A stretch of DNA of 64,000 nucleotides from Paragordius varius (taxonomy: Eukaryota; Animalia; Nematomorpha): assembly GCA_964247055.1 (NCBI GenBank), contig OZ176054.1, forward strand, positions 8,122,001 through 8,186,000. The letters run 5' to 3'. The position numbers and the translations under genes were made by a program. The notes beneath the pieces were generated by a model. The model had not been told where the DNA came from, searched no databases, and was given only the letters and a program-made list of their open reading frames with translations. Of the stretch, positions 1,181-22,600 are shown piece after piece (position 1 is the first letter of the stretch; each line of letters opens with the position of its first letter).

Positions 1181-2200
1181 CTAGCGTAAATCTCGTGCTG
1201 CTACGCAGCCCGAGGAGGTCCTTCGGACTTCTGGGGGGGGGGGCATTTTTAATTTTATAGGCAATTTTGGTATGCGGCACGAAGTTTTAAAATGATTCAC
1301 ATAGTGTCATATACTGAAATTTGGCTCCAAAGACATGCTGTATGGATATGAATGCGCAGTTGTGGGCGGGTGGCCCCCTACCCAGAGGCCAATATAAAAA
1401 TGTAGTTGGATAAGAAAAATTGCCTTTATCCCTGGAATAATCGTTCAGTCCTAATAGTTTATGGAAGAATGGTTTCAAAACTAAATAATAGTTCAATGAT
1501 AGCGCATTTTTAGGGAGTAAAGGGCCTATTTAACGGTTAATTATAAAAATCCGCTTGACTAAAATTTTTGACTTTTTACGGGTAATACTTTAAGCAGCTA
1601 TTGAACTCTATGGCCTGATAGGTTTTCTGAAATTTAGCCCCAAAAGCACGCTATTTCGATATGACGGGTCAGTTTTTCGCGGGTAGCTCCTTACTCAGCT
1701 GCTATCATCAAAGAAACGGTGGACTAAAATTTTTGCCTTTTAACAAGGAATACGTGGAATCCATATTGAATTTTTACGGTCTCATACCTTAGGCAAAAAA
1801 TCGATTAAAAAAATATTTTTGTGGACTTTATTTTTTAAAAAAGGTGGCATTTTACGGGGGGAGCGGGTAAAAAGAAGGCCTAAATCAAAAAAATGAGTCG
1901 ACTATGTTCAGCGCGATCAAAAATAAGTAAACAAAAATCATATTTAAAATTGAATGGTCCAACACGTTCTCCAAAAAATTGTTTCAAAGACACGATTTTT
2001 GTGGACTTGTGTTTTCAAAAAAACCCGTTTTTCACACGGGGTGGGCCCGAACTGGGGGCCTATTTCAAAAAAAGGACGAAGCTATTGTCGGGGCATTCAT
2101 TAATGATTATATTTTTTCGATATTCGGATTTGATTGGGTCTACCGGTTTTCCTGTACCAGATCACAAAGCCAGCATTTTCCATTTTTATAAATATATAGA
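1181..2200 (-). mobile_element. Non-autonomous Helitron
   Basis: On the minus strand: A|TC 5' end at 2200, 3' hairpin ctcgggctgc-gta-gcagcacgag followed by CTAG|T at 1181. It is homologous to 29000-31345 and carries internal ~160-bp repeat units. Confidence 0.8.
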
Positions 2201-2539
2201 TAAGTAATATTAATATCAACAAATTAAGTTAAACTTAAATTTTGGCGCATATTATATTGATTTTCATCAATTATTTTTTATGTTACTAATATAAAGGGCT
2301 AAATTCAGTTGGATTTATTAAATTAAGGTTTATTTTAAAGCTATCCATTCATATTGAGCCAAAATTTGCAAATAAATTGATTTTTTTCGAATATAACCAT
2401 ATATGGAAAAAGTGGAAAAAAAATTTTCTACATTGACAATTTTTTTCATCCTTTATTTTTGAGATATATATATGTCACAACGGTCATGAAGCTAAATGTG
2501 ATATTGTGAGAAAATTTGTTGCACACTGTGTAATAGTGC

Positions 2540-3664
2540 TATTGTTGCGAGGTTAATATATTTGTTTGGATAGCCTTTCACGAGTGGAATTTTTTCCAGA
2601 ACTGAACTATGCAATGCTTGACAGTTTCTCCGAGTCATCCATCTGCTGATACCTTATCTCCAGATAAACAAGTTCTAAAATGTCTCAATCTTGTCTCAAT
2701 CTTAAACTTGTTGATAACGTAATTAGGGAGATGTTTTCATTAAGCTTTTTTGTCATATAAAATTTAAGTTATTTACTAAAAGAATTGGAAGATTAGTACA
2801 TTTTTAAGTAACCAGTTACATTGTGGGCATGGATCGAATTGCTTTTAACCTCTTTTCCGCATCTTCGGCATAAGCATTCAATTTTTTTAATATCATCCAT
2901 CATTAATTTTGTTTTACCTGAATTAACAACCATTCCATAAAATTCCAAACATTATTTCCAGTTTTCGAAGGTACAGAGAGGTTTATTTGATTCTTCTAAG
3001 AGTACATCATCATCTATGTAATTTTCCAAGTTAAACCACATTTAACTTCCATCATTGCGATGATAATGTTGTGAACACAAAGGGCTAAGTAAGCCTTGAT
3101 GAAGGCCGTGAAGTGAGCGCAAATGCCGTTTTAACCATAGATGTTGTTACTTTGAATAAAACCATTATTGCATCTACAAACTTCGACCCCTTTTCGGAGG
3201 GCCCAAAGTACCAGATTTCTTGTAGAATCGTAAGCCTTTTGAAAATCTATGAAAACATAGTATAATGGGGTTGTCGTAAATGCGCAATTTGTAATTAGCG
3301 TAAAATAAACATTTCAGTCGTATGCATTTACTTTAAATGAATCCGAATTGCATAACGTTCACCTGGCTCCAACTTTTGACGATTCATTAACACTCATTCA
3401 TAGACTTTCATAATATGCTCCAAATTTTATTGGCTATAGCTGATGATTGTCCTTATCATCTTTACATTTATAGCTAGGGATAAAAAACTTTCCCTCTAAT
3501 CATATGGTACCATGTTCGATGCTATCCAGGCATCCAGAAAAGGGTATGACAGGCATGGTTTCAACCGCCACTGTCAAAACAGGAGGACCCTTACCGCCTT
3601 CCTACGCTTTTACACACCTCAGGGCAGGGGGAACTTCCTTGTCCGGTGCTTCTAAGGGTATATA
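2540..3664 (-). pseudogene. Degenerate RTE-like LINE, RT half (3' part, split by the Chapaev insertion)
   Basis: Manual minus-strand translation gives a broken KAYD motif, HQG..LSP, GMVVNSGKTKLM, CRRCGKEVKSNSI and YLGDKVS, with many stops and frameshifts. Confidence 0.7.
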
Positions 3665-5007
3665 CAGCACAGTGTGCAACAAATTTACTTAGGATATCAT
3701 ATTAAGCTTAATATGACCGTTGTGACATAGACATCCTAAAAATATAAGGATAAAAAAAATTATCAATGTAGAAAAAAATTTTTTCCGCCTTTTCCATATA
3801 TGGATATATTCGGAAAAAATCGATTTATTTGCATAATACTTGATCAAAAATTATAAAACTTATATAAAATAAATATAATATTAAATAAATATTATTTGCA
3901 AATTTTGGCTCAATATAAATGGATAGATTTAAAATAAACGTCAATTTAGTTAATCCAACCAAATTTAGCCCTTTATATTAGTAACATAAAAAATACTTGA
4001 TGAAAATAAGTATAATATGCGCCAAAGTTTAAGTTTAACTTTATATGTTTAAACAATTACTACTTATATATAATAAAAATTACTTTATAATAAAGTTATA
4101 AATTTTTGAAATTTTTTATTTTGCTAAAATAAATTTAAAATTTTTTAATATAAATTGAAGTTTGATCATGTTTTATCATATGTAATTCAGATGAATCGAG
4201 GTGTAAAGATTAAAGTTGAAATACTGTCAATTTAACCCTGATACTGATAGTATATTTATAATAATTTTAGGTAACTAAATATTGTTTAATTTACAGAAAA
4301 GAAATCTTTCAAGCTTAATAATTATTGCAATCATCTAATCATAATAATATATTTATTACAGATCTTATTTTAATGGTTTAGGTGCATTCCACAAATTAAA
4401 AATGTGAAAAAATTCAAATAATGACGCATTTCTTGGATGATTTTTTAAAAAAGAAAGTTTATGGCTATGGGAAGAATTATACTAATCATTTTAGTAAAAC
4501 TGCGCTACTAAAAGCGTATTTATAGCTTTGAATTGCAAGATATACCTTTTTTTACTATAAATCTCTGCAAGTTTTTACAGTTTTAATATATTGTACGGTT
4601 CTTAAAAAACCTTTCCAATGAGTTGGATTTCATATTTCGCCTAAGTAGGATATAGTACCGATGACCTAAGAAGAGAATGGATAACCCAAAAGAAACCTTG
4701 CCAAACTCAACACTTAAACTTATATTAGCAATATATGGAAGAGTTTTATTTATTTCGAAATAGTGTTTTCGTTTCTAAAACATTCATCGAAAAACATAAT
4801 TTAATATTCAAAAGAGTGAATATTGTATATGTATAGCAAAAATATATTTATTACACATAGAATGTAATTTAAATTATTAATTATAGGCAGAATATAAGAA
4901 TGAAGATAATCATTAAAAATATATAAATGAATATAATTTACCTGAACGACAGGTTTTGCATAAAAATATAAATTATACAAATTTGAATAAATAACAGGTA
5001 TATTGTA

Positions 5008-6505
5008 TCATAATGGTTGATCTAGGCAATAATGCCAAAGATACTCACCAATCATATGACTGGGGTTTTTGTTCCTGTACAAATTTTCTATTTTTTGCAA
5101 GGTTTGATGAACTCTTTCTCCTGTCTGATCAGTGAGTTTACTGAGTGAAAATTTGTCTATGTGCTGGTCCACTATGTGTAGTTTGAGCGACATATTTACA
5201 CCTAATAGTAAATAAAGTTAATATCATAATACATTAATTTAATATAACTTTTTATTTACCCAGTTGATGAAAACTACTAACGAGATCGGATGCCAATTCC
5301 CTGTAGTTCTCACTTTTATAATGATAGAGGAAGTTATCATTAAACAACTTGTATGCCTCCCAAGCATTCCTCTCCTTAACTTCCATCAAATTATAAAATT
5401 CTTGATCTGCCAAGAGTTGGTCGATTTGGGGACCAGTCAAGCACCCATTTGATAATTTAGATTTAGACATTTTGAATTTACCAAGATAATGGGTAAATGC
5501 CAAACCATCCATATCCAAATTAATCAAAAAGGTTCTTGCCAGCCCCAATTTTATGTGAAGAGGAGGGACCACTAATCTATCCATATCGACTAATGGTGTC
5601 CTCTCTATCCCATACTCTCCGATCACATCAACCAATCTGGGAAATGTATCCCCAGGCTGACTGAAATGCGTTTCAATAGCCCGGCTATTGAAATGGCACC
5701 ACGGACAGGAGAAGGTAGGATAACCCGATTTTAGTCCTCTTAAAATTGACAGAACCTATATATTAAGGTTAAATAATACTTTAAAATCACCAATTATTTT
5801 CCATTGGTTATCATACCCTATCAAGCGCAACATTTCTGAATACAATTCATAGCTTTCCCGCTCATTTGGCTGCTTTCCTTTCCATGCAATCAAGGGTTTG
5901 GAAATCGCCATATCATGAAGCAATACAACTTTGAAGCTATTCTATAAATTAAATATGGCAATGAGTTATATATTAATATTTAACATATACAAATAATATT
6001 AAAGTTAATTAAATCGAATTCGCATCCATGAAAAGGCTCCAATCTTCCTGAATATATTTTTTATTCGTCTGTTCCATTAAAAAAGGTATATCACAACAAT
6101 AGTGTATATCATTTTCGAGGGTGTATGCATGGGAAAATAAAGTATTTCTGCTACGGTAAGTACTAGTATATTTTTCTTTTTTAAAGCAGATATTAGTTTC
6201 CCGCTATTTCTTATGTTCATTCTAGTGTCTCGAATTAGGCTATCCACATCATTTTGCGACCAACGAGGATTTGGTTCCTCTTCAGGAAGAAACTCTTAAA
6301 AATATTAATAAACATTTTATTTAATAATTGTATCTAAAAAAACAAAACACCAATAAATATATGTATATATAGGTTTATTCAAATATATAAGGAATAATAC
6401 CCTCTTCGTCACTTGCTATGTTTAGTATATTTTCTTGCGTGGACTTGGGCGCTAGTGTATGTTTTTCCATAATCGGTCTTCGAGCTGACTCTAGACCGGG
6501 ATACA
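5008..6505 (-). pseudogene. Chapaev-like transposase, inverted partial copy (left arm)
   Basis: ORFs 5252-5635 (PPLHIKLGL..GPQI..AWEAYK) and 5008-5193 (MSLKLH..GERVHQ..YLW). It lacks the spacer-encoded N-terminal zinc-binding region, and one intron donor is AT instead of GT. Confidence 0.8.
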
Positions 6506-8309
6506 CAAAAAATGCAATTTACGTGCAATCAACTCTAACATAATCCATTTATATGAAGCATATTTTAAAGACAAACTTGCTGATTACCAACAAATATGGG
6601 CCCCACCCAATATATGCGCAGGATGCCATGTTACGTTATATAAGTGGAATAAAAATGGGAGTCAACGCTTTCCTTTTTCTATTCCGATGATTTGGAGAAT
6701 TCCGAAAAATCATATAAATGGTATCAATCATATTAAATTTCATAAGATTGTTTGTTTTGTATGATGGATAAAAGTACGCTTACCACTAAGCGTTTAAATA
6801 AAAATGTAGTATATCCCGATCTAGAGTCAGCTCGAAGACCGATTATGGAAAAACATACACTAGCGCCCAAGTCCACGCAAGAAAATATACTAAACATAGC
6901 AAGTGACGAAGAGGGTATTATTCCTTATATATTTGAATAAACCTATATATACATATATTTATTGGTGTTTTGTTTTTTTAGATACAATTATTAAATAAAA
7001 TGTTTATTAATATTTTTAAGAGTTTCTTCCTGAAGAGGAACCAAATCCTCGTTGGTCGCAAAATGATGTGGATAGCCTAATTCGAGACACTAGAATGAAC
7101 ATAAGAAATAGAGGGAAACTAATATCTGCTTTAAAAAAGAAAAATATACTAGTACTTACCGTAGCAGAAATACTTTATTTTCCCATGCATACACCCTCGA
7201 AAATGATATACACTATTGTTGTGATATACCTTTTTTAATGGAACAGACGAATAAAAAATATATTCAGGAAGATTGGAGCCTTTTCATGGATGCGAATTCG
7301 GTTTAATTAACTTTAATATTATTTGTATATGTTAAATATTAATATATAACTCATTGCCATATTTAATTTATAGAATAGCTTCAAAGTTGTATTGCTTCAT
7401 GATATGGCAATTTCCAAACCCTTGATTATTGCATGGAAAGGAAAGCAGCCAAATGAGCGGGAAAGCTATGAATTGTATTCAGAAATGTTGCGCCTGATAG
7501 GGTATGATAACCAATGGAAAATAATTGGTGATTTTAAAGTATTATTTAACCTTAATATATAGGTTATGTCAATTTTAAGAGGACTAAAATCGGGTTATCC
7601 TACCTTCTCCTGTCCGTGGTGCCATTTCAATAGCCGGGCTATTGAAACGCATTTCAGTCAGCCTGGGGATACATTTCCCAGATTGGTTGATGTGATCGGA
7701 GAGTATGGGATAGAGAGGACACCATTAGTCGATATGGATAGATTAGTGGTCCCTCCTCTTCACATAAAATTGGGGCTGGCAAGAACCTTTTTGATTAATT
7801 TGGATATGGATGGTTGGCATTTACCCATTATCTTGGTAAATTCAAAATGTCTAAATCTAAATTATCAAATGGGTGCTTGACTGGTCCCCAAATCGACCAA
7901 CTCTTGGCAGATCAAGAATTTTATAATTTGATGGAAGTTAAGGAGAGGAATGCTTGGGAGGCATACAAGTTGTTTAATGATAACTTCCTCTATCATTATA
8001 AAAGTGAGAACCACAGGGAATTGGCATCCGATCTCGTTAGTAGTTTTCATCAACTGGGTAAATAAAAAGTTATATTAAATTAATGTATTATGATATTAAC
8101 TTTATTTACTATTAGGTGTAAATATGTCGCTCAAACTACACATAGTGGACCAGCACATAGACAAATTTTCACTCAGTAAACTCACTGATCAGACAGGAGA
8201 AAGAGTTCATCAAACCTTGCAAAAAATAGAAAATTTGTACAGGAACAAAAACCCCAGTCATATGATTGGTGAGTATCTTTGGCATTATTGCCTAGATCAA
8301 CCATTATGA
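6504..8309 (+). pseudogene. Chapaev-like transposase, spliced and disrupted (spacer + right arm)
   Basis: Exons translate to YEAYF..WAPPNICAGC..PMIWRIPKNHINDCLFC..YPDLESARRP, WSLFMD, GDFKVMSILRG..CPWC, PPLHIKLGL and MSLKLH..GERVHQ, which are motifs I recognise from Chapaev3-type transposases. Introns lie at 6721-6746, ~6914-7020, 7301-7373, 7539-7562 and ~8060-8115. Frameshifts occur near 7140 and 7813, and the first ~20 codons are missing. Confidence 0.8.
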
Positions 8310-9669
8310 TACAATATACCTGTTATTTATTCAAATTTGTATAATTTATATTTTTATGCAAAACCTGTCGTTCAGGTAAATTATATTCATTTATATATTT
8401 TTAATGATTATCTTCATTCTTATTTTCTGCCTATAATTAATAATTTAAATTACATTCTATGTGTAATAAATATATTTTTGCTATACATATACAATATTCA
8501 CTCTTTTCAATATAAAATTATGTTTTTCGATGAATGTTTTAGAAACGAGAACACTATTTCGAAATAAATAAAACTCTTCCATATATTGCTAATATAAGTT
8601 TAAATGTTGAGTTTGGCAAGGTTTCATTGGTTTCTTTTGGGTTATCCATTCTCTTCTTAGGTCATCGGTACTATATCCTACTTAGGCGAAATATGAAATC
8701 CAACTCATTGGAAAGGTTTTTTAAGAACCGTACAATATATTAAAACTGTAAAAACTTGCAGAGATTTATAGTAAAAAAAGGTATATCTTGCAATTCAAAG
8801 CTATAAATAGGCTTTTAGTAGCGCAGTTTTACTAAAATGATTAGTATAATTCTTCCCATAGCCATAAACTTTCTTTTTTAAAAAATCATCCAAGAAATGC
8901 GTCATTATTTGAATTTTTTCACATTTTTAATTTGTGGAATGCACCTAAAAAACCATTAAAATAAGATCTGTAATAAATATATTATTATGATTATATGATT
9001 GCAATAATTATTAAGCTTGAAAGATTTTTTTTGTGTAATTAAACAATATTTAGTTACCTAAAATTATTATAAATATACTATCAGTATCAGGGTTAAATTG
9101 ACAGTATTTCAACTTTATTCTTTACACCTCGATTCACTGAATTACATATGATAAAACATGATCAAACTTCAATTTATATTAAAAAATTTTAATTTTGTTT
9201 TAGCAAAATAAAAAATTTCAAAAATTTATAACTTTATTATAAAGTAATTTTTATTATATATATGTAGTAATTGTTAAAACATATAAAGTTAAACTTAAAT
9301 TTTGGCGCATATTTTATTGATTTTCATCAAGTATTTTTTATGTTACTAATATAAAGGGCTAAATTTGGTTGGATTAACTAAATTGACGTTTATTTTAAAT
9401 CTATCCATTTATATTGAGCCAAAATTTGCAAATAATATTTATCTAATATTATATTTATTTTATATAAGTTTTATAATGATCAAGTATTATGCAAATAAAT
9501 CGATTTTTTCCAAATATATCCATATATGGAAAAGGCGGAAAAAAAAATTTTCTACATTGATAATTTTATTTTATCCTTATATTTTTAGGATGTCTATGTC
9601 ACAACGGTCATATTAAGCTTAATATGATATCCTGAGAAAAAAATACCCCCAATTTTGCACACTGTGCAG

Positions 9670-10560
9670 TAAAACATGCAGTGCTACACAAGAAAAATAA
9701 AATGATATAATAGTACCAAATAATATGCATTACCCCCTATCAAAGAATTTGGGTCACAGAAAATCACAAACTGTCCCCACCGGATTCGCCCTTCTTTCAG
9801 ATAGTCCGGCGCTCCCATCGATGCTGTCGTTTGGCGTAATAAAGTTTTAACTCTTCCTCCTCTAACAGCTCTTTATTAATTTGACCACTTCTATTTTCCA
9901 ACTCCCAAAAAGACAAAATCTCTCTCCGCAAGGCCAAGGCGCCGCAAGAAAACACACACACCCAGGCTATGTTTTCTTGTAGTTCGAGTAGGCTGGGCGG
10001 GCATCAAATTTCTATTCCAGAGCTACTTTAAGTGGGCTCACTTTCATAATGGCTAACTGATGGCCACCACACTCACACTACACACCCGGTATTCCCAGCA
10101 CGAGAGGTCCTAGCATATGATGATTTCACCATCCACATTCCAGCAGAGTTTATATATTCGATCATTAATATCTTCTTGGGATATAACAAACTCGTAAAAG
10201 TTATTATAAATGAAGTAACCTGTACCAGATGACTTATTATTTTAACCACTCCATATTAGTTTGTAATTCAAGTCATTTTATGACAAATATTTTCCAGCGA
10301 CATTCTTGTATATCACATACTAAAACATTTCTATCATCTAACATCGTAGCTGTTTCCAAAGTTTTTCCGGTAACGAATTAATATTCCATGTAGAAAACTT
10401 TATTTTAGGGCCTGTAGCCGAATTAGATATAATTTTGGTCCGCAATTTATTTGGAGCTAATGACAAAATTATTTTAACAATTAGTTTAAGTTTCCCTTTT
10501 GAATATATTTTTACCGTACATTCAGGAACTTTAGAAAATGACCCAATCGATAACGTTGAT
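9670..10560 (-). pseudogene. Degenerate RTE-like LINE, APE endonuclease half (5' part)
   Basis: Minus strand ~10420-10130 reads KIKFSTWNINSL..DIQECRWK..YKLIWSG..GTGYFI..DRIYKL, the N-terminus of an apurinic endonuclease. It is collinear with the RT half across the Chapaev insertion. Confidence 0.7.
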
Positions 10561-16600: not shown

Positions 16601-19600
16601 TGGAAGTTAAGGATGTCCAAAATATTAGAAATAAAAGTAATAATTATTTCGTCACTTTCACGTGCAGAGATGTCTTTTATTTGTTGTCCAGGTTCCAAAG
16701 TAAATAAGGAAATTACAGTAAGTTTTTGACTATTTTTTAGAGCAGGCATACTTGATGATGAATCGTTCGAACTCAATAAATATTGTAGCAGCTATTATAA
16801 ATTATTTTGTACCACAAATAAATTAATTCGTAACAAAACACATTCCAACCTTATTCATATAATTTATAAAAGTTATTTAGCTTTTAAATATATTATTACA
16901 TAATTTAGCATAACTTCATATATTGAAATCATGATAATTCAATATTTTTGTGTTAACTAAAAAATTAATATTTTATGTCGAATTTTGCCCATTAAAACTT
17001 TGATAAATAAGGATGTAGTATTATACGAGTTTTCAAAAATATGGTTCATATTTTAGTTCGCCATATTAAAATGAATAGACAATGTTAGCTAATATAAAAT
17101 ACTTTAACAAAATGAGTTTTTAAAACAATCAATTTAATATATTTTAAAAATTACTGTATATATTGCATCTATTCTCCCTTGCTCTGCTAACCAGGATAAA
17201 CAAGATATAATTAAGGATATATAGATTGGACATTTTACATCCACTTCCATTTTGATTAACATGATCTCATCAATTTTGAGCTTTATAAAATTTATGATTT
17301 TTGATGGATATTTATCAACTTTAATCGTATTTTGTGCATTATACAATTGGTGGTACAATTGACATAGGGGAATCATGAAACTTTTAAAGTTTTGAATTAT
17401 CTTTGAACAATTATAATCAACAACAGTGTCTGCTAATTGTGTCGATTCGCCATCAATGGTATGAGAGTGTCGTAATAACAAGGGAAACACATAATTTCGA
17501 CATATAACTTCTGGTTTATGCTTGAATAAATCTTTCAAAGTAACGAGATGATTCATATCGCCTATTAGACAAATCAAGTTTTTAATCTATTTGACAACTT
17601 TACCATTAATAATTATAGATCTCTAAGGTTTAGTTTAAGAATCATCAAAAGTGAGAAAATTAATTAATTGTTATCAAATAACGTCTTTTTAGTACTAAAA
17701 TTAAAAATTTAATATATCTTTTAGTAGAAAATTAATATGGTACCGAAGTCTGGTTGGCAAACATAAATAATGTGATCCAAAATCCTGAAAATAATAATGG
17801 GCAGTTGATAATCCTATTAAATATAATTATACTTTAAAGACATATATAAATAATAGGTTAATGCCGGTATTATGTCAACATTTCATAAAAACATTTAAAA
17901 AGTTTTAAAAATTAATACTTCCGAACATTAGAAGATTTATGGAAAAAAACTTAAAAAGCATTAACTTTGCCATTATTCTATCGACAATGAGCATAATTTT
18001 TTTATGGAATTTAAATACGTCTGTCCCTTTTTGTGGGTTATATATTTTTTTAATAATTTAGATTATATAGGGTTTCCGACACAAATGGTTTGCATGCCAA
18101 TTCGTATAAAACATAAACGCCAATAAATTTATATTTTAATTATATAAAAATGAGGATTGTAATAATAAGTTATAAAACAAAAAATATAAATTTAACATGT
18201 TTCGCCATGCTATAAAAAAATGATTATGTAAAATAATATACCTGAAAATCTAATGCTTCTTTACCATATGTCAGCAAATTCGAAACATTTTCTACCAAAT
18301 GGGTAACATTTTCAATAGCAAAAGCACGGTATAATAAGAAATTGTGCAGAATAGTATTGTCCTTTTCTCGAACATGAGTTAATCTAAAAGAAAAATATGT
18401 TACAAAATTTAAAATAAGCAACTAAAACTATCAATTATAATTATCTGTTTAATTTAATTTATTTAACACTAAAATTAATTTAATTTTGTAAAAGACTTTA
18501 TATTTCTATTTTTGTTGTCTAAAAAATATTTAATTAAAAATAATTTTTAAATGTAAAAGGTATAATATGGTGAAAAAAATCAAATATACAAAGTTATAAA
18601 AAATATATAAATTATTTGGACAAAATTAGCTTTTTTTTATAATATACCAATAATAAATATACCATTTCCCAGTCTAAATAAACGTTTTCCCAGTCAATCG
18701 AAACATCTTCCCAATCAATCGAAACGTTTTCCCAGTCAATCAAAACATTTTCCCAGTCAATCGAAACATTTTCCCAGTCAATAAAAACGGTTTTATTTTT
18801 AATGATAAATAATAAAACAAGAATATAAAAACAACTTTTAACCATTATTAGCGTACTATATGGAGATATTTTTAATTATAAACACAATTATTGAATGACA
18901 ATTTTTCCAAGTATATTCCTAATGACTTATTCTTTAAATGTTATATTTTTGGAATTTAAGATAATTTTTTTTATTTTATCGATGGTTCGCATTAATATAT
19001 GCGGCTAACTTAAAAAATCTATAGTTACGGAGGAATTAATAAAATTTATAAAAATATACCATTTTTGTCTCAAAGGTCATTTAACACTTTATATTGGATC
19101 TTAAACATAAATTTTACGCTAATTTTATAATATCTAACATTTCGTTGGGGGCCTAAGGCGGCCTTCCGAGTATCTTTGTGCGGCCCGCAAAAAATTTGGA
19201 AAACCATATGCAAAAATATGCCCACAAAATCTTATCAAATATTTCTTACGCAATTATGAATGATTCTATTAAATTGGTAATGAATTAAAAAAAAATTGTT
19301 ATATTGTGTTTGTATTTTATAGTCTTATAAAATTATGTGAATGCCCATATGTATTTCGAATGGGGAACCGTGTGCTTATTGAGTTAAAAATGCGGCCCGC
19401 GAAGGCATTTAGTTGGACACCCTTGTTTTAGTCAAATATCTTTTTTATTTATTAAATATTTTTAAATCAAAAACATTTTTATCAAAAAAATTTTCGTTAA
19501 GATATTTTTTCCGACAGTATTTTTATCGACAAACCGGACAAATTTAAAAACTATTGTGAAGCGTTCCGCAAATATTAATGCGAACTATCAATAAAATAAA

Positions 19601-22600
19601 AAAATATTATCTTAACTCAAATTCCAAAAATATAACATTTAAAGAATAAATCATCAATGATTGTGCACTGGAATATACTTAAAATTGTCATTCAATAATA
19701 GTGTTTTTATAAAAAATAATATCCTAATATTACGCTAATAATGGTTAAAAGTTGTTTTTATATTCTTGTTTTATTATTTATCATTAAAAATAAAACCGTT
19801 TTTATTGACTGGGAAAACGTTTTTATTGATTGGGAAAATGTTTTTATTGACTGGGAAAATGTTTCGATTGACTGGGAAAACGTTTCGATTGACTGGGAAA
19901 ACGTTTCGATTGACTGGGAAAATGTTTCGATTGACTGGGAAAATGTTTTGATTGACTGGGAAAACGTTTCGATTGATTGGGAAGATGTTTCGATTGACTG
20001 GGAAAACGTTTATTTAGACTGGGAAATGGTATATAATATATAACCCGATAATGTTAAAATACTAGAGAATAATAAATTAATACTCATCATTAACTTAAAT
20101 TCCGATAAATCAATATTTAATCCATCTTGGTCATGATGTGATATACTACCAAATACATTGGTATTTTGATCAAACAGGGCTTCAGGTTTATTGATACTTT
20201 CTTCATACCCCATTAAAGTGTCAAAATCTATATCAAGGCTTTCCGCAAAATCCAACGTTTTCTCCTAAAAAGAATTGTAATATCAATATGGAATTGGTAA
20301 ATACTACTAGTATTTTTATGAAAAAAGTATTTCATATTAAAACAAAAAAAATAAATGTTAAACCAATGTTTTAATCTTATTGTGTGTCTGATCCAAAACC
20401 AAGTAGTTTAATATTAGTATGAATATCGAGGTGTCAAAATTCGGTGGGAGATACCATAAGAGACACAGTATATATGGCCTGATAGATTCTAAAAAAATAG
20501 ATATAATATTTATATAATCATTATTTTGATAATTTTGTTCATGCAAACTGTTTAAAATATAATACAAAATCAAATTAATTTATTAGATATATCAAATGGT
20601 TACTTTTATATTGCATAGAATATGCTTGATATGCTAGTTTAAGTGCAACACAAATCAATTCGAATTTTTCAAAATTATCCATTGTTTCCGCCAATCCTTT
20701 TAACACCAACCATATATTAGTATGTCGAAAAAATTGCCAAAATTCTGGGTTAAATTCTTTGTTCGAAAGCGCAATCATGCCCTAACAAAATATAAGTTAC
20801 TTTTTCAATAATATTATTTCAACTCAAACCTTGTTTAATACGATTCGATTAAAAATATATACTTTATACATATCAAGCCGAAACAATTGGGATTGAAATT
20901 GCGCTACGTATTGCTTATCCACCTCCCTGCTCCTATTCAATAAAAAAATATTGTTAATTAATTGTAAAGATAGAATTGTTTAATTAACATTAATAAATAT
21001 ACCTTTTCACAAGTTTAAAACCAAATTTAAGGGTATAGATTGAATCTTCTAAAGTAGAACTTAGAGATTCCAGTGATTGCTGAATGACCCATGACTTATT
21101 TCCAATCTTTTTCTGTTAAATGTGCCAAATTTTAGAAATAAATTAAAAAACGTTGGATTTAATTTATTTATAATTTATAGTAAAAAAATTATGGAAAGGG
21201 TTTCATGAAACAGGACAGACATATATTTGTTAGTTAATTTTTCTATCCGCAATTCGTTTATATTGTAAAAAGTTTAATTGTTTCGTTTTATTTGTATCTA
21301 TTATCAATATATTTTTTATTTTGTAAATATGTTTTTTCCCATATTTCAAGACAATTATCCATTCTAGTGCTTACATACGAAGGCTGCTGCAAAAAAAAAT
21401 CGAAAAAAACTTCAGAATCAATCCAAATTCAATCATATAGAAAATGTAAATCCATTGTACCGAATACCTGATCACAATCCCTTAACAAAGTAATAGCAAT
21501 CTCTGATCACAATGGGCAGGCCAGTGGAAACAGGATAAGACATTCATATTATTAATACTATAAAAAATTATTCAATAAAATTACCAGCTGAATAGGGGAT
21601 ACCCTAAACACCATGGTACAGTACAATAACAAAAGATCTCAAAAGGCCTAATTTTAATATAGAAAGAGCTAAATCACGAAACAATTGGAGATATACCCTG
21701 AGTGTGTGGCCATTTTAGAGCGAATACCTTTACAGATGTTGATGATGATATCCGTTTGCGAACAAATATTAGATTTTACAAAAAGTAAAATAAACTTTAT
21801 GTTAGTTGACAGTTTTCATTTACTTAAAATATTACAGCTTAGCTTAACATGCATTTCATAAATCTCCATTTTTTTATTGGAAAATATTGGGTTAAACACA
21901 TGGATGGATTTTCGAATTTACTAAAATGCCCAAATTATAAAGTAAATAGAATAAAATTCGGAATTAAAAACAATTTGGTAATGTAAAACTTAATATGTTA
22001 AAAATAAATCTGGTTTTGCGAAAATTCTATGTATCCTTATTGCTTATTTTCAAATATTTGATTGAATGAAATTTTAGTATAAACTACCAAATAATTATCG
22101 CAATCCGTTTTAGTTTTAAGTGAATGTGTCCATTGATCCATATATACGTGATCGGTTTCAAGGGCATATTTTCCAGCAAAAATTAATGCTTCATCGTATA
22201 ATTTGGCTTTAATCTATTGGTAATAAAGTATAAATAAATTTTATGCAAAAAAATATAATTTCGCGTTTGTTAAAACATTAGTATATATATATATATATAA
22301 TTATTGTCATTTATTTAATACTACCTTCCTTTCATATAATTTTTGAGGTGTAGTACTTTCTATGGCATATAATTTTTGATAAACATTGCATGGTCTTTAA
22401 AAATATATAAATATAAATATAAAATTAAATAACAAAATCAAATTTCATGTATATAAATAAAAATTTACATTAAATCTGGCTCGACATATCCCATTAATTG
22501 TAAAAATATCATGGGCACTTGCATAAATGTATTTGAATATGCTTTAAATATATATTTGATGGTATCTTGCAAGCTAACAAATGGATTATTGGGTGTTTGC

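What the first reader, a model, noticed from the sequence alone, without database searches (positions are those of the whole stretch)
3668..9666. 6-kb palindromic Chapaev-like transposon with head-to-head transposase copies and one intact target duplication
Seen: ~2.8-kb near-identical inverted arms, each with the 3' two-thirds of the transposase, flank a ~300-bp spacer holding the zinc-binding exon. The outer CAC/GTG ends are flanked by the same CAG. The normal 5' end of the gene appears replaced by an inverted copy of the 3' region, while the outermost ~25-35 bp of the two ends differ. Inference: a foldback derivative made by template switching or abortive gap repair that either transposed as a unit or formed in place. 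Any read-through transcript would fold into ~2.8 kb of dsRNA, a potential siRNA trap silencing the whole family.
Basis: partly seen in the sequence, partly recalled or inferred. Interest (0 to 1): 0.8.

Follow-up and report, generated by a model that had tools for sequence, protein, structure and literature searches.

The report
Chapaev3 transposon with overgrown inverted ends
A 6-kb cut-and-paste transposon of the RAG1-related Chapaev3 kind has mirror-image ends grown inward over four-fifths of its own enzyme gene, and it is a real but defective example of something that recurs across this genome.

Summary
Window 3668-9666 is one element with mirror arms (3668-6506 and 6809-9666; 32 substitutions, 11 indel events) around a 302-bp unique centre.

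Nine paralogous empty sites show a 3-bp target duplication (CAG), which confirms both ends.

It belongs to Chapaev3:
- CAC...GTG ends;
- family target A|TWA|T;
- D, D, E plus C(2)C, LH and H(4)H motifs;
- 548-618-aa relatives elsewhere.

It is not a one-off.
- All six transposase-bearing copies of this family are head-to-head, each with different breakpoints.
- Its roughly 25 short relatives carry 0.8-1 kb inverted ends as the norm.
- 18 Chapaev3 loci and 13 Tc1-type loci in this genome are head-to-head. None is tail-to-tail.

Best reading: the long inverted ends were extended inward by template switching during break or gap repair. This destroyed the first ~21 codons and the promoter, so the copy is defective. 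The closest precedent is Galileo, whose ends recruit the end of its ORF.

The hairpin-RNA silencer idea (like Mu killer) remains untested.

Earlier notes of this scan report the same kind of element on other DNA of this genome.

In passing: every mobile copy pairs one short-spacer end with one long-spacer end behind a CACAGTG heptamer, and the gene has 24-26-nt micro-introns.

The parts
3665..3667 (.). Left copy of the 3-bp target-site duplication (CAG), preceded by A
   Evidence: Sequence. Paralogous empty sites show a 3-bp overlap of the flank matches.
3668..3702 (+). L-type terminus: CACAGTGTGCAA, then a short variable segment, then TAGGATATC
   Evidence: The same end type sits at one end of nearly every family member.
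3668..6506 (-). Left arm: inverted copy of the 3' non-coding region and of codons ~115 to the stop. It includes an intact 167-aa catalytic exon at 5255-5755.
3703..4380 (.). Outer layer of the left arm (mirror about 8950-9631). It is 2.5% diverged between the arms and corresponds to the family's ordinary long inverted end.
   Evidence: 17 substitutions in 678 bp against 14 in 2126 bp further in, Fisher p = 2e-4
6501..6506 (.). Junction of the left arm with native 5' coding sequence: 6 nt (ATACAC) that match both partners imperfectly (microhomology)
6507..6808 (+). Unique centre: truncated N-terminal zinc-finger (Chapa-type) exon 6507-6720, micro-intron 6721-6746, and the start of the exon that begins DCLFC
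6809..9666 (+). Right arm. Exons: 6747-6914, 7021-7300 (first D), 7374-7538 (second D), 7563-8057 (C(2)C and LH; 1-nt deletion near 7815), 8116-8309 (H(4)H, E, stop). The 3' non-coding region follows.
7539..7562 (+). 24-nt GT-AG micro-intron (25-28 nt in older copies). The mirror copy lies in the left arm.
9632..9666 (-). R-type terminus: CACAGTGTGCAA, then AATTGGGGGTATTTTTTT, then CTCAGGATATC. About 10 nt longer than the L-type.
9667..9669 (.). Right copy of the target-site duplication (CAG), followed by T
3524..3667 (.). Host repeat into which the element inserted (continues at 9667 to about 10066)
   Evidence: 40 or more paralogues of the left part and 17 of the right part

Best explanation
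This is a single-copy, defective member of a Chapaev3 (CMC superfamily) cut-and-paste transposon family. The family normally carries long inverted ends (0.5-1 kb) behind two distinct outer termini, an L-type and an R-type.

In this copy the inverted ends were extended inward. A break or excision gap was repaired by DNA synthesis that started in one long end, switched to the homologous other end, and copied on into the neighbouring 3' non-coding region and most of the transposase gene. It then rejoined at a microhomology inside the zinc-finger exon.

The result keeps one L end and one R end and the 3-bp target duplication. It has 2.8-kb arms, and it has lost the promoter and the first ~21 codons. 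It cannot make transposase and could move only with help from another copy.

Shown here: the anatomy, the family membership, the target duplication, the recurrence of the architecture, and the family's canonical order (end, 5' coding sequence, gene, 3' untranslated region, end).

Inferred: the repair mechanism, and that the extension is younger than the outer layer of the arms.
For: - Structure.
- Chapaev3 identity: 14 of 16 paired family elements have perfect 3-bp duplications, 11 of them TTA or TAA, after an A. All have CAC...GTG ends. D/D/E, C(2)C, LH and H(4)H align with 548-618-aa relatives. These criteria come from PMC4079192.
- Empty sites confirm the target duplication and the ends.
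- Long ends are the family norm: arms of 0.82-0.97 kb at 97-98.5% identity.
- Every typed element pairs one L end with one R end, so the termini were not copied from one another.
- Short relatives place a 5' coding piece (window 6541-6597) about 650 bp from the terminus, reading inward, and in both arms. This shows the canonical order. It also shows that internal sequence has been recruited into the ends from the 5' side too.
- Five other gene-bearing copies are head-to-head with different breakpoints and arm identities of 70-90%, so the events are repeated and of different ages.
- The outer 678 bp of the arms is 2.5% diverged against 0.66% further in.
- The junction shows microhomology.
- Precedent: Galileo recruits the final piece of its ORF into its ends (PMC4168063).
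Against: - No canonical, non-palindromic full-length copy of this exact family is in the assembly, so the progenitor is inferred from fragments and short derivatives.
- The divergence step could instead reflect a higher mutation or error rate in the AT-rich outer region, or gene conversion biased toward the centre.
- A symmetric repair mechanism does not explain why large palindromes are always head-to-head (18 Chapaev3 loci and 13 Tc1-type loci against none tail-to-tail).
- No sequencing reads were available to confirm the assembly.
Confidence: 0.6

Rival explanations
1. Centre deletion of a fully palindromic ancestor. The active form of the family was a perfect palindrome with two divergent complete transposase genes. 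One deletion across its unstable centre left one copy cut at codon ~115 and the other at codon ~22.
For: - Intact, multi-copy twin-gene palindromes exist for Tc1-type elements in this genome. Paired 341-aa open frames lie head-to-head at C2:4.376M, C9:1.407M and C1:13.996M.
- One deletion explains each pair of breakpoints and the uniform head-to-head polarity.
- No canonical copy of this family was found.
Against: - No Chapaev3 locus shows paired N-terminal exons. All 18 N-terminal matches are unpaired.
- The short relatives carry the 5' coding piece next to the long end reading inward. A twin-gene arm predicts the opposite.
- The C5:6.82M element has end, native upstream sequence, then 5' coding sequence, with no inverted gene between them.
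- The two-layer divergence of the arms is not predicted.
Confidence: 0.2
2. One-step snap-back of the 3' half. A broken or half-copied element folded back on itself and copied its own 3' half out to the terminus. One terminus was later converted to the other end type.
For: - The junction is microhomology-type.
- The arms are each other's closest relatives in trees.
- This is the classical abortive gap-repair route to defective elements, as discussed for Galileo in PMC4168063.
Against: - It would give two identical termini. This copy, and the older palindrome at C1:12.32M, each have one L end and one R end.
- It needs an extra conversion confined to about 20 nt.
- The outer layer of the arms is older than the inner part.
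Confidence: 0.1
3. Assembly artefact: a chimeric or unsplit palindromic long read produced a false inverted duplication.
For: No reads could be examined. Two of the frame defects lie in homopolymer runs, where long-read errors are common.
Against: - The arms differ at 32 substitutions and 11 indel events.
- The two ends are of different conserved types.
- The target duplication is exact and backed by nine empty sites.
- Five older loci have the same architecture with diverged arms.
Confidence: 0.03
4. Working silencer. The element is kept, or matters, because transcripts through it fold into about 2.8 kb of double-stranded RNA. That RNA would feed small-RNA silencing of the family, as Mu killer does for MuDR in maize.
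For: - The architecture matches Mu killer: a partial inverted duplication of a transposase gene with two element ends (PMC3440606).
- The arms are 98-99% complementary.
Against: - No RNA or small-RNA data were available.
- No promoter was identified. A candidate first exon inside the end was not conserved in relatives.
- Older palindromic copies decayed to 70-90% arm identity like neutral DNA.
Confidence: 0.12

Closest known systems
Chapaev3 transposons (Merrow, Garfield, Conan; CMC superfamily), PMC4079192
   Same: - 3-bp TWA target duplication between A and T.
- CAC...GTG termini.
- DDE core with C(2)C, LH and H(4)H motifs.
- Relatives of about 556 aa.
- N-terminal zinc-finger (Chapa) domain, which a 2026 preprint links to the N terminus of RAG1.
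   Different: - Described Chapaev3 consensus elements are about 2.3 kb, with one or two exons and no reported long ends.
- This family has 0.5-1 kb ends, here 2.8 kb.
- It has two distinct terminus types.
- Its gene has at least five introns, including two of 24-26 nt.
Galileo (P superfamily, Drosophila): extension of the inverted ends by recruiting internal sequence, PMC4168063
   Same: Long, dynamic inverted ends. The final piece of the transposase ORF is recruited into both ends (69 bp to more than 500 bp), with the same polarity as here. The explanation given there is abortive or template-switching gap repair.
   Different: Different superfamily, target duplication and phylum. Here about 1.3 kb of coding sequence (about 80%) plus introns is engulfed and the gene is destroyed. 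The Galileo authors called the trait unique to Galileo.
Mu killer of maize, PMC3440606
   Same: A natural partial inverted duplication of a transposase gene, flanked by two copies of an element end, able in principle to give a multi-kb hairpin RNA.
   Different: Mu killer duplicates the 5' part of mudrA and is transcribed from a flanking gene, and its silencing is shown genetically. Here the 3' part is duplicated and no transcription or small RNA is known.
Foldback-like elements with asymmetric terminal motifs (Tm1 of root-knot nematodes), PMC3169594
   Same: Variable long composite inverted ends, plus short non-inverted motifs that differ between the two ends (A1 and A2), lying outside the repeat.
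   Different: Tm1 is a Mutator/Phantom-type element with 9-bp duplications. Its ends are built from tandem motifs, not from recruited gene sequence.

Membership tests
Chapaev3 (Chapaev / CMC superfamily) | 3-bp target-site duplication, consensus TWA, inserted between A and T | tested here: met
   Of 16 paired family elements, 14 have perfect 3-bp duplications, 11 of them TTA or TAA, usually after an A. This copy has A|CAG|T, which has the right length and context but an off-consensus sequence. It is confirmed by nine empty sites.
Chapaev3 (Chapaev / CMC superfamily) | Invariable 5'-CAC ... GTG-3' termini | tested here: met
   CACAGTGTGCAA at both ends of this copy and of about 40 family ends
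Chapaev3 (Chapaev / CMC superfamily) | DDE catalytic core with C(2)C, LH and H(4)H motifs | tested here: met
   LFMD, GDFKV, CPWC, PPLHIKLG, HIVDQH and GERVHQ align with the conserved columns of nine relatives of 548-618 aa. Pfam and NCBIfam have no model for this domain.
Chapaev3 (Chapaev / CMC superfamily) | N-terminal Chapa (RAG1 NZD-like) zinc-finger domain | tested here: met
   The centre encodes the domain from about residue 22 (CAGCH...PMIWR...DCLFC). The first FCYVCG is lost here but present in the related fragment L030. Relatives give weak zf-AD matches and an Atlas lead to RAG1_imp_bd. Domain definition: bioRxiv 10.64898/2026.01.24.700457.
Chapaev3 (Chapaev / CMC superfamily) | Placement among Repbase Chapaev3 transposases in a phylogeny | not testable with these tools
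   No Repbase sequences were on hand.
Galileo-type extension of the inverted ends (a mode of evolution, not a clade) | Internal, ORF-derived sequence present in both inverted ends | tested here: met
   Codons ~115 to the stop, plus introns, lie in both arms. Other family members have recruited different internal pieces.
Galileo / P superfamily | P-type transposase (THAP domain) and 7-bp target duplication | tested here: not met
   The duplication is 3 bp and the motifs are Chapaev-type. It works like Galileo but is not a member.
Mu killer-type hairpin silencer | Partial inverted duplication of a transposase gene | tested here: met
Mu killer-type hairpin silencer | Transcript across the duplication, derived small RNAs, and silencing of the family | not testable with these tools
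   No RNA data. A candidate internal start was not conserved.

The most novel reading that the evidence does not exclude
The two ends are functionally different and must be paired one of each. Both start with the exact RSS-like heptamer CACAGTG. A shared CTCA(A/G)GATATC motif follows after a short segment in the L type and after a segment 7-11 nt longer in the R type. Every typed mobile copy has one L end and one R end, even though the arms behind them are homogenised within elements and the internal orientation flips. That would be a 12/23-like pairing rule in Chapaev3, the one transposon superfamily that shares the RAG1 N-terminal zinc domain. It would also explain how near-perfect palindromes stay mobile.
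Probability: 0.15. Interest if true: 0.8.

Novelty: new variant of a known kind. Interest (0 to 1): 0.45.

Why it matters
- Recruitment of a transposase ORF into the inverted ends was called unique to Galileo. Here it occurs, in extreme form, in an unrelated superfamily and phylum.
- In this genome it is a recurrent, strongly polar process. Thirty-one head-to-head loci were seen across two superfamilies, and none tail-to-tail.
- That polarity is unexplained by symmetric repair models. It points either to selection against convergent twin promoters or to a one-sided repair step. Both are testable with reads and small-RNA data.
- The locus is also a ready-made test of whether natural transposon palindromes seed silencing in an animal.
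- The conserved L/R end asymmetry gives a concrete hypothesis about end pairing in a RAG1-related transposon.

Tried and rejected
- **Pfam and NCBIfam scans.** Scans of seven exon translations found nothing. Full-length relatives gave only weak zf-AD matches and carry no names.
- **Promoter and first exon inside the long end.** ATGAATCGAG|GT at 4192 has the right phase for the missing start. I rejected it because the motif is absent from 14 other family elements.
- **L-arm and R-arm lineages shared across elements.** Rejected for this copy, because its arms cluster by element. The short 2.3-kb group does keep separate L and R arm clades.
- **hAT palindromes.** A scan for the hAT C-terminal domain showed no pairs among the 30 matches listed.
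- **Nested self-insertion (double-Ds type).** Rejected, because the centre junction lies in mid-exon on both sides and has no terminus sequence.
- **RNA-mediated origin.** Rejected, because the introns and the 3' end sequences are present in both arms.
- **Fetching the other palindromic loci.** Those loci are known only from match tables.
- **Spliced protein.** It was never joined. No whole-protein search or fold was made.
Full report
**1. Observation**

The repeat finder shows nine collinear inverted segments. Together they pair 3684-6506 with 6809-9640 at 95-100% complementarity. A global alignment of the arms has 32 substitutions and 11 indel events. The 302 bp between the arms (6507-6808) is unique.

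Both ends start CACAGTGTGCAA. They then differ for 11 nt (left) against 21 nt (right), and match again from AGGATATC onward.

The window is G000:C5:8122001-8186000 of a 110.5-Mb, 27% G+C animal assembly. Earlier notes of this scan call it hairworm-like. I did not check that label.

**2. Boundaries and target duplication**

The flanks belong to another repeat family. In at least nine paralogues the match to the left flank and the match to the right flank overlap by exactly 3 bp. One example is C5:6988771-6988917 against C5:6988915-6989311. The element therefore inserted at A|CAG|T and duplicated CAG, and 3668 and 9666 are its true ends. The argument rests on coordinates.

**3. The gene**

Reading the + strand from the centre gives this model:

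| Segment | Coordinates | Notes |
|---|---|---|
| Truncated zinc-finger exon | 6507-6720 | |
| GT-AG intron | 6721-6746 | 26 nt |
| Exon | 6747-6914 | |
| Intron | 6915-7020 | |
| Exon | 7021-7300 | apparent frame change in an A-run near 7140, shared by both arms; ends in LFMDANS |
| Intron | 7301-7373 | |
| Exon | 7374-7538 | GDFKV |
| Intron | 7539-7562 | 24 nt |
| Exon | 7563-8057 | CPWC, PPLHIKLG |
| Intron | 8058-8115 | |
| Last exon | 8116-8309 | HIVDQH, GERVHQ |

The right copy has a 1-nt deletion near 7815 that the left copy lacks. Both frame defects sit in homopolymer runs, so they could be assembly errors.

Relatives start about 21 residues earlier, with M...FCYVCG. The related fragment L030 keeps FCYVCGKIHKKCNLR, whereas this copy reads stop-TGIHKKCNLR. 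The start codon, the first CxxC and everything upstream have therefore been replaced by the left arm. At the junction, 6501-6506 (ATACAC) matches both partners at 5 of 6 positions.

All searches were made exon by exon.

**4. Family**

Pfam and NCBIfam have no model for these exons. A full HMMER scan with the 167-aa exon found 1189 relatives. Full-length ones are 548-618 aa, unnamed, and come for example from sandfly and biting-midge genomes. The alignment shows the D, D, E positions and the C(2)C, LH and H(4)H motifs.

PMC4079192 gives the Chapaev3 hallmarks:
- a transposase of about 556 aa carrying these three motifs;
- CAC...GTG termini;
- a TWA duplication between A and T.

In this genome, 14 of 16 paired family elements have perfect 3-bp duplications, 11 of them TTA or TAA, usually preceded by A.

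[quoted passage not shown] Supporting leads are weak zf-AD matches and Atlas hits to RAG1 families. Membership in Chapaev3 is well supported. Only a tree with Repbase sequences is missing.

**5. Not a one-off**

- A DNA search of the genome found five more gene-bearing copies, all head-to-head. Each has its own pair of breakpoints.

| Locus | Position | Breakpoints (1 = window 6507) |
|---|---|---|
| L025 | C1:12.32M | 652/923 |
| L026 | C5:12.13M | 572/961 |
| L027 | C2:7.417M | 975/1483 |
| L028 | C1:2.125M | 890/1053 |
| L029 | C4:5.215M | 1202/1351 |

- Their arms are 70-90% identical, against about 98-99% here (98.0% in the same BLAST measure). They are older and have decayed without homogenisation.
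- L025 has a TTA duplication and one L-type end, paired with an end that resembles the R type.
- About 25 short elements (1.0-2.45 kb) share the outer 500-610 bp. They have arms of 0.82-0.97 kb at 97-98.5% identity.
- Protein searches add 12 head-to-head loci in more distant Chapaev3 lineages. A Pfam DDE_3 search adds 13 head-to-head Tc1-type loci, several with two intact 341-aa frames.
- I saw no tail-to-tail pair in any table.
- Earlier notes of this scan (s1-298955, s1-334294, s1-257526) describe the same kind of element on other DNA of this genome. My tables agree for Chapaev3 and Tc1. I could not confirm it for hAT.

**6. How it arose**

- **The termini.** Nearly every element has one L-type and one R-type terminus. 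The termini were therefore not copied from each other.
- **Canonical order.** The short relatives show the order: terminus, about 505-630 bp of inverted end, then 5' coding sequence reading inward (window 6541-6597), then a deletion, then 3' untranslated sequence and the other end. In the 2.3-kb group the 5' piece and some 3' untranslated sequence have been recruited into both arms. The C5:6.82M element keeps 135 bp of native upstream sequence directly inside the end. The progenitor was thus an ordinary long-ended element, and its ends have grown inward repeatedly, from either side.
- **Two layers in this copy.** The outer 678 bp of the arms is 2.5% diverged, like the family's ordinary ends. 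The inner 2126 bp is 0.66% diverged (Fisher p = 2e-4). This fits an old end plus a recent extension.
- **Likely route.** The simplest route is synthesis during break or gap repair that switches between the homologous arms and then rejoins by microhomology. [quoted passage not shown]
- **Main rival.** The alternative is a centre deletion of a twin-gene palindrome. It fits the Tc1 data. For this family, the inward-reading 5' pieces and the lack of paired N-terminal exons contradict it.
- **Unit or in place.** This copy is single-copy. The inherited target duplication fits both possibilities, so I cannot say whether it jumped as a unit or was rebuilt in place.

**7. What it does**

Nothing shows a function. 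It cannot encode a transposase. A transcript crossing it would fold into a long hairpin, as in Mu killer. I have no RNA data and found no conserved internal start. The older palindromes decayed like neutral DNA.

**8. Unexplained**

The strict head-to-head polarity of large palindromes (31 loci against none) is not predicted by symmetric repair. Selection against convergent promoters is a plausible but untested reason.

**9. Verdict**

This is a real, well-bounded, young and defective Chapaev3 element with overgrown inverted ends. It is a new variant of a known process, already met elsewhere in this genome. Interest is moderate.

Noticed in passing
window 3668-3702 and 9632-9666; family ends in L035-L064: There are two conserved terminus types behind the same CACAGTGTGCAA, whose first seven bases equal the RSS heptamer consensus. 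The L type has an 8-nt variable segment and the R type a 15-19-nt segment containing TTGGGGGT, both before CTCA(A/G)GATATC. Every typed mobile copy has one of each. Internal orientation relative to L and R differs between copies.
   Followed up: partly
window 6721-6746 and 7539-7562 (mirror copies in the left arm); L025-L031: The transposase gene carries GT-AG micro-introns of 26 and 24 nt at positions where relatives from other species are uninterrupted. In older family copies they are 24-28 nt with the flanking frame kept, so they behave as real introns. Described Chapaev3 genes mostly have one exon.
   Followed up: partly
G000 tables: C2:4376215/4377838, C9:1406528/1408151, C1:13995616/13997238, C11:1383523/1386669, C8:315654/318760 and others: Thirteen Tc1-type (DDE_3) loci are head-to-head pairs, several with two intact 341-aa frames and present at three or more sites. 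This suggests an active twin-gene palindromic Tc1 family. No tail-to-tail pair was seen.
   Followed up: partly
window 2182-2530: A 350-bp terminal fragment of the same family, with an L-type end at 2530 facing right (flank TTA), lies 1.1 kb to the left of the element.
   Followed up: partly
window 3524-3667 and 9667-10066: The element sits inside a copy of another dispersed repeat that has at least 40 paralogues. I did not classify it.
   Followed up: no
L031/L032 (G000:C2:3.54M and 3.52M): Two identical loci 21 kb apart hold only the N-terminal ~150 codons of a related transposase in an open frame, behind a thrice-repeated copy of the native upstream region. This could be a captured or domesticated zinc-finger fragment within a segmental duplication.
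   Followed up: no
window 18665-19921: A separate inverted repeat: 241-nt arms at 90% identity, 775 nt apart. It is probably an unrelated small element with inverted ends.
   Followed up: no
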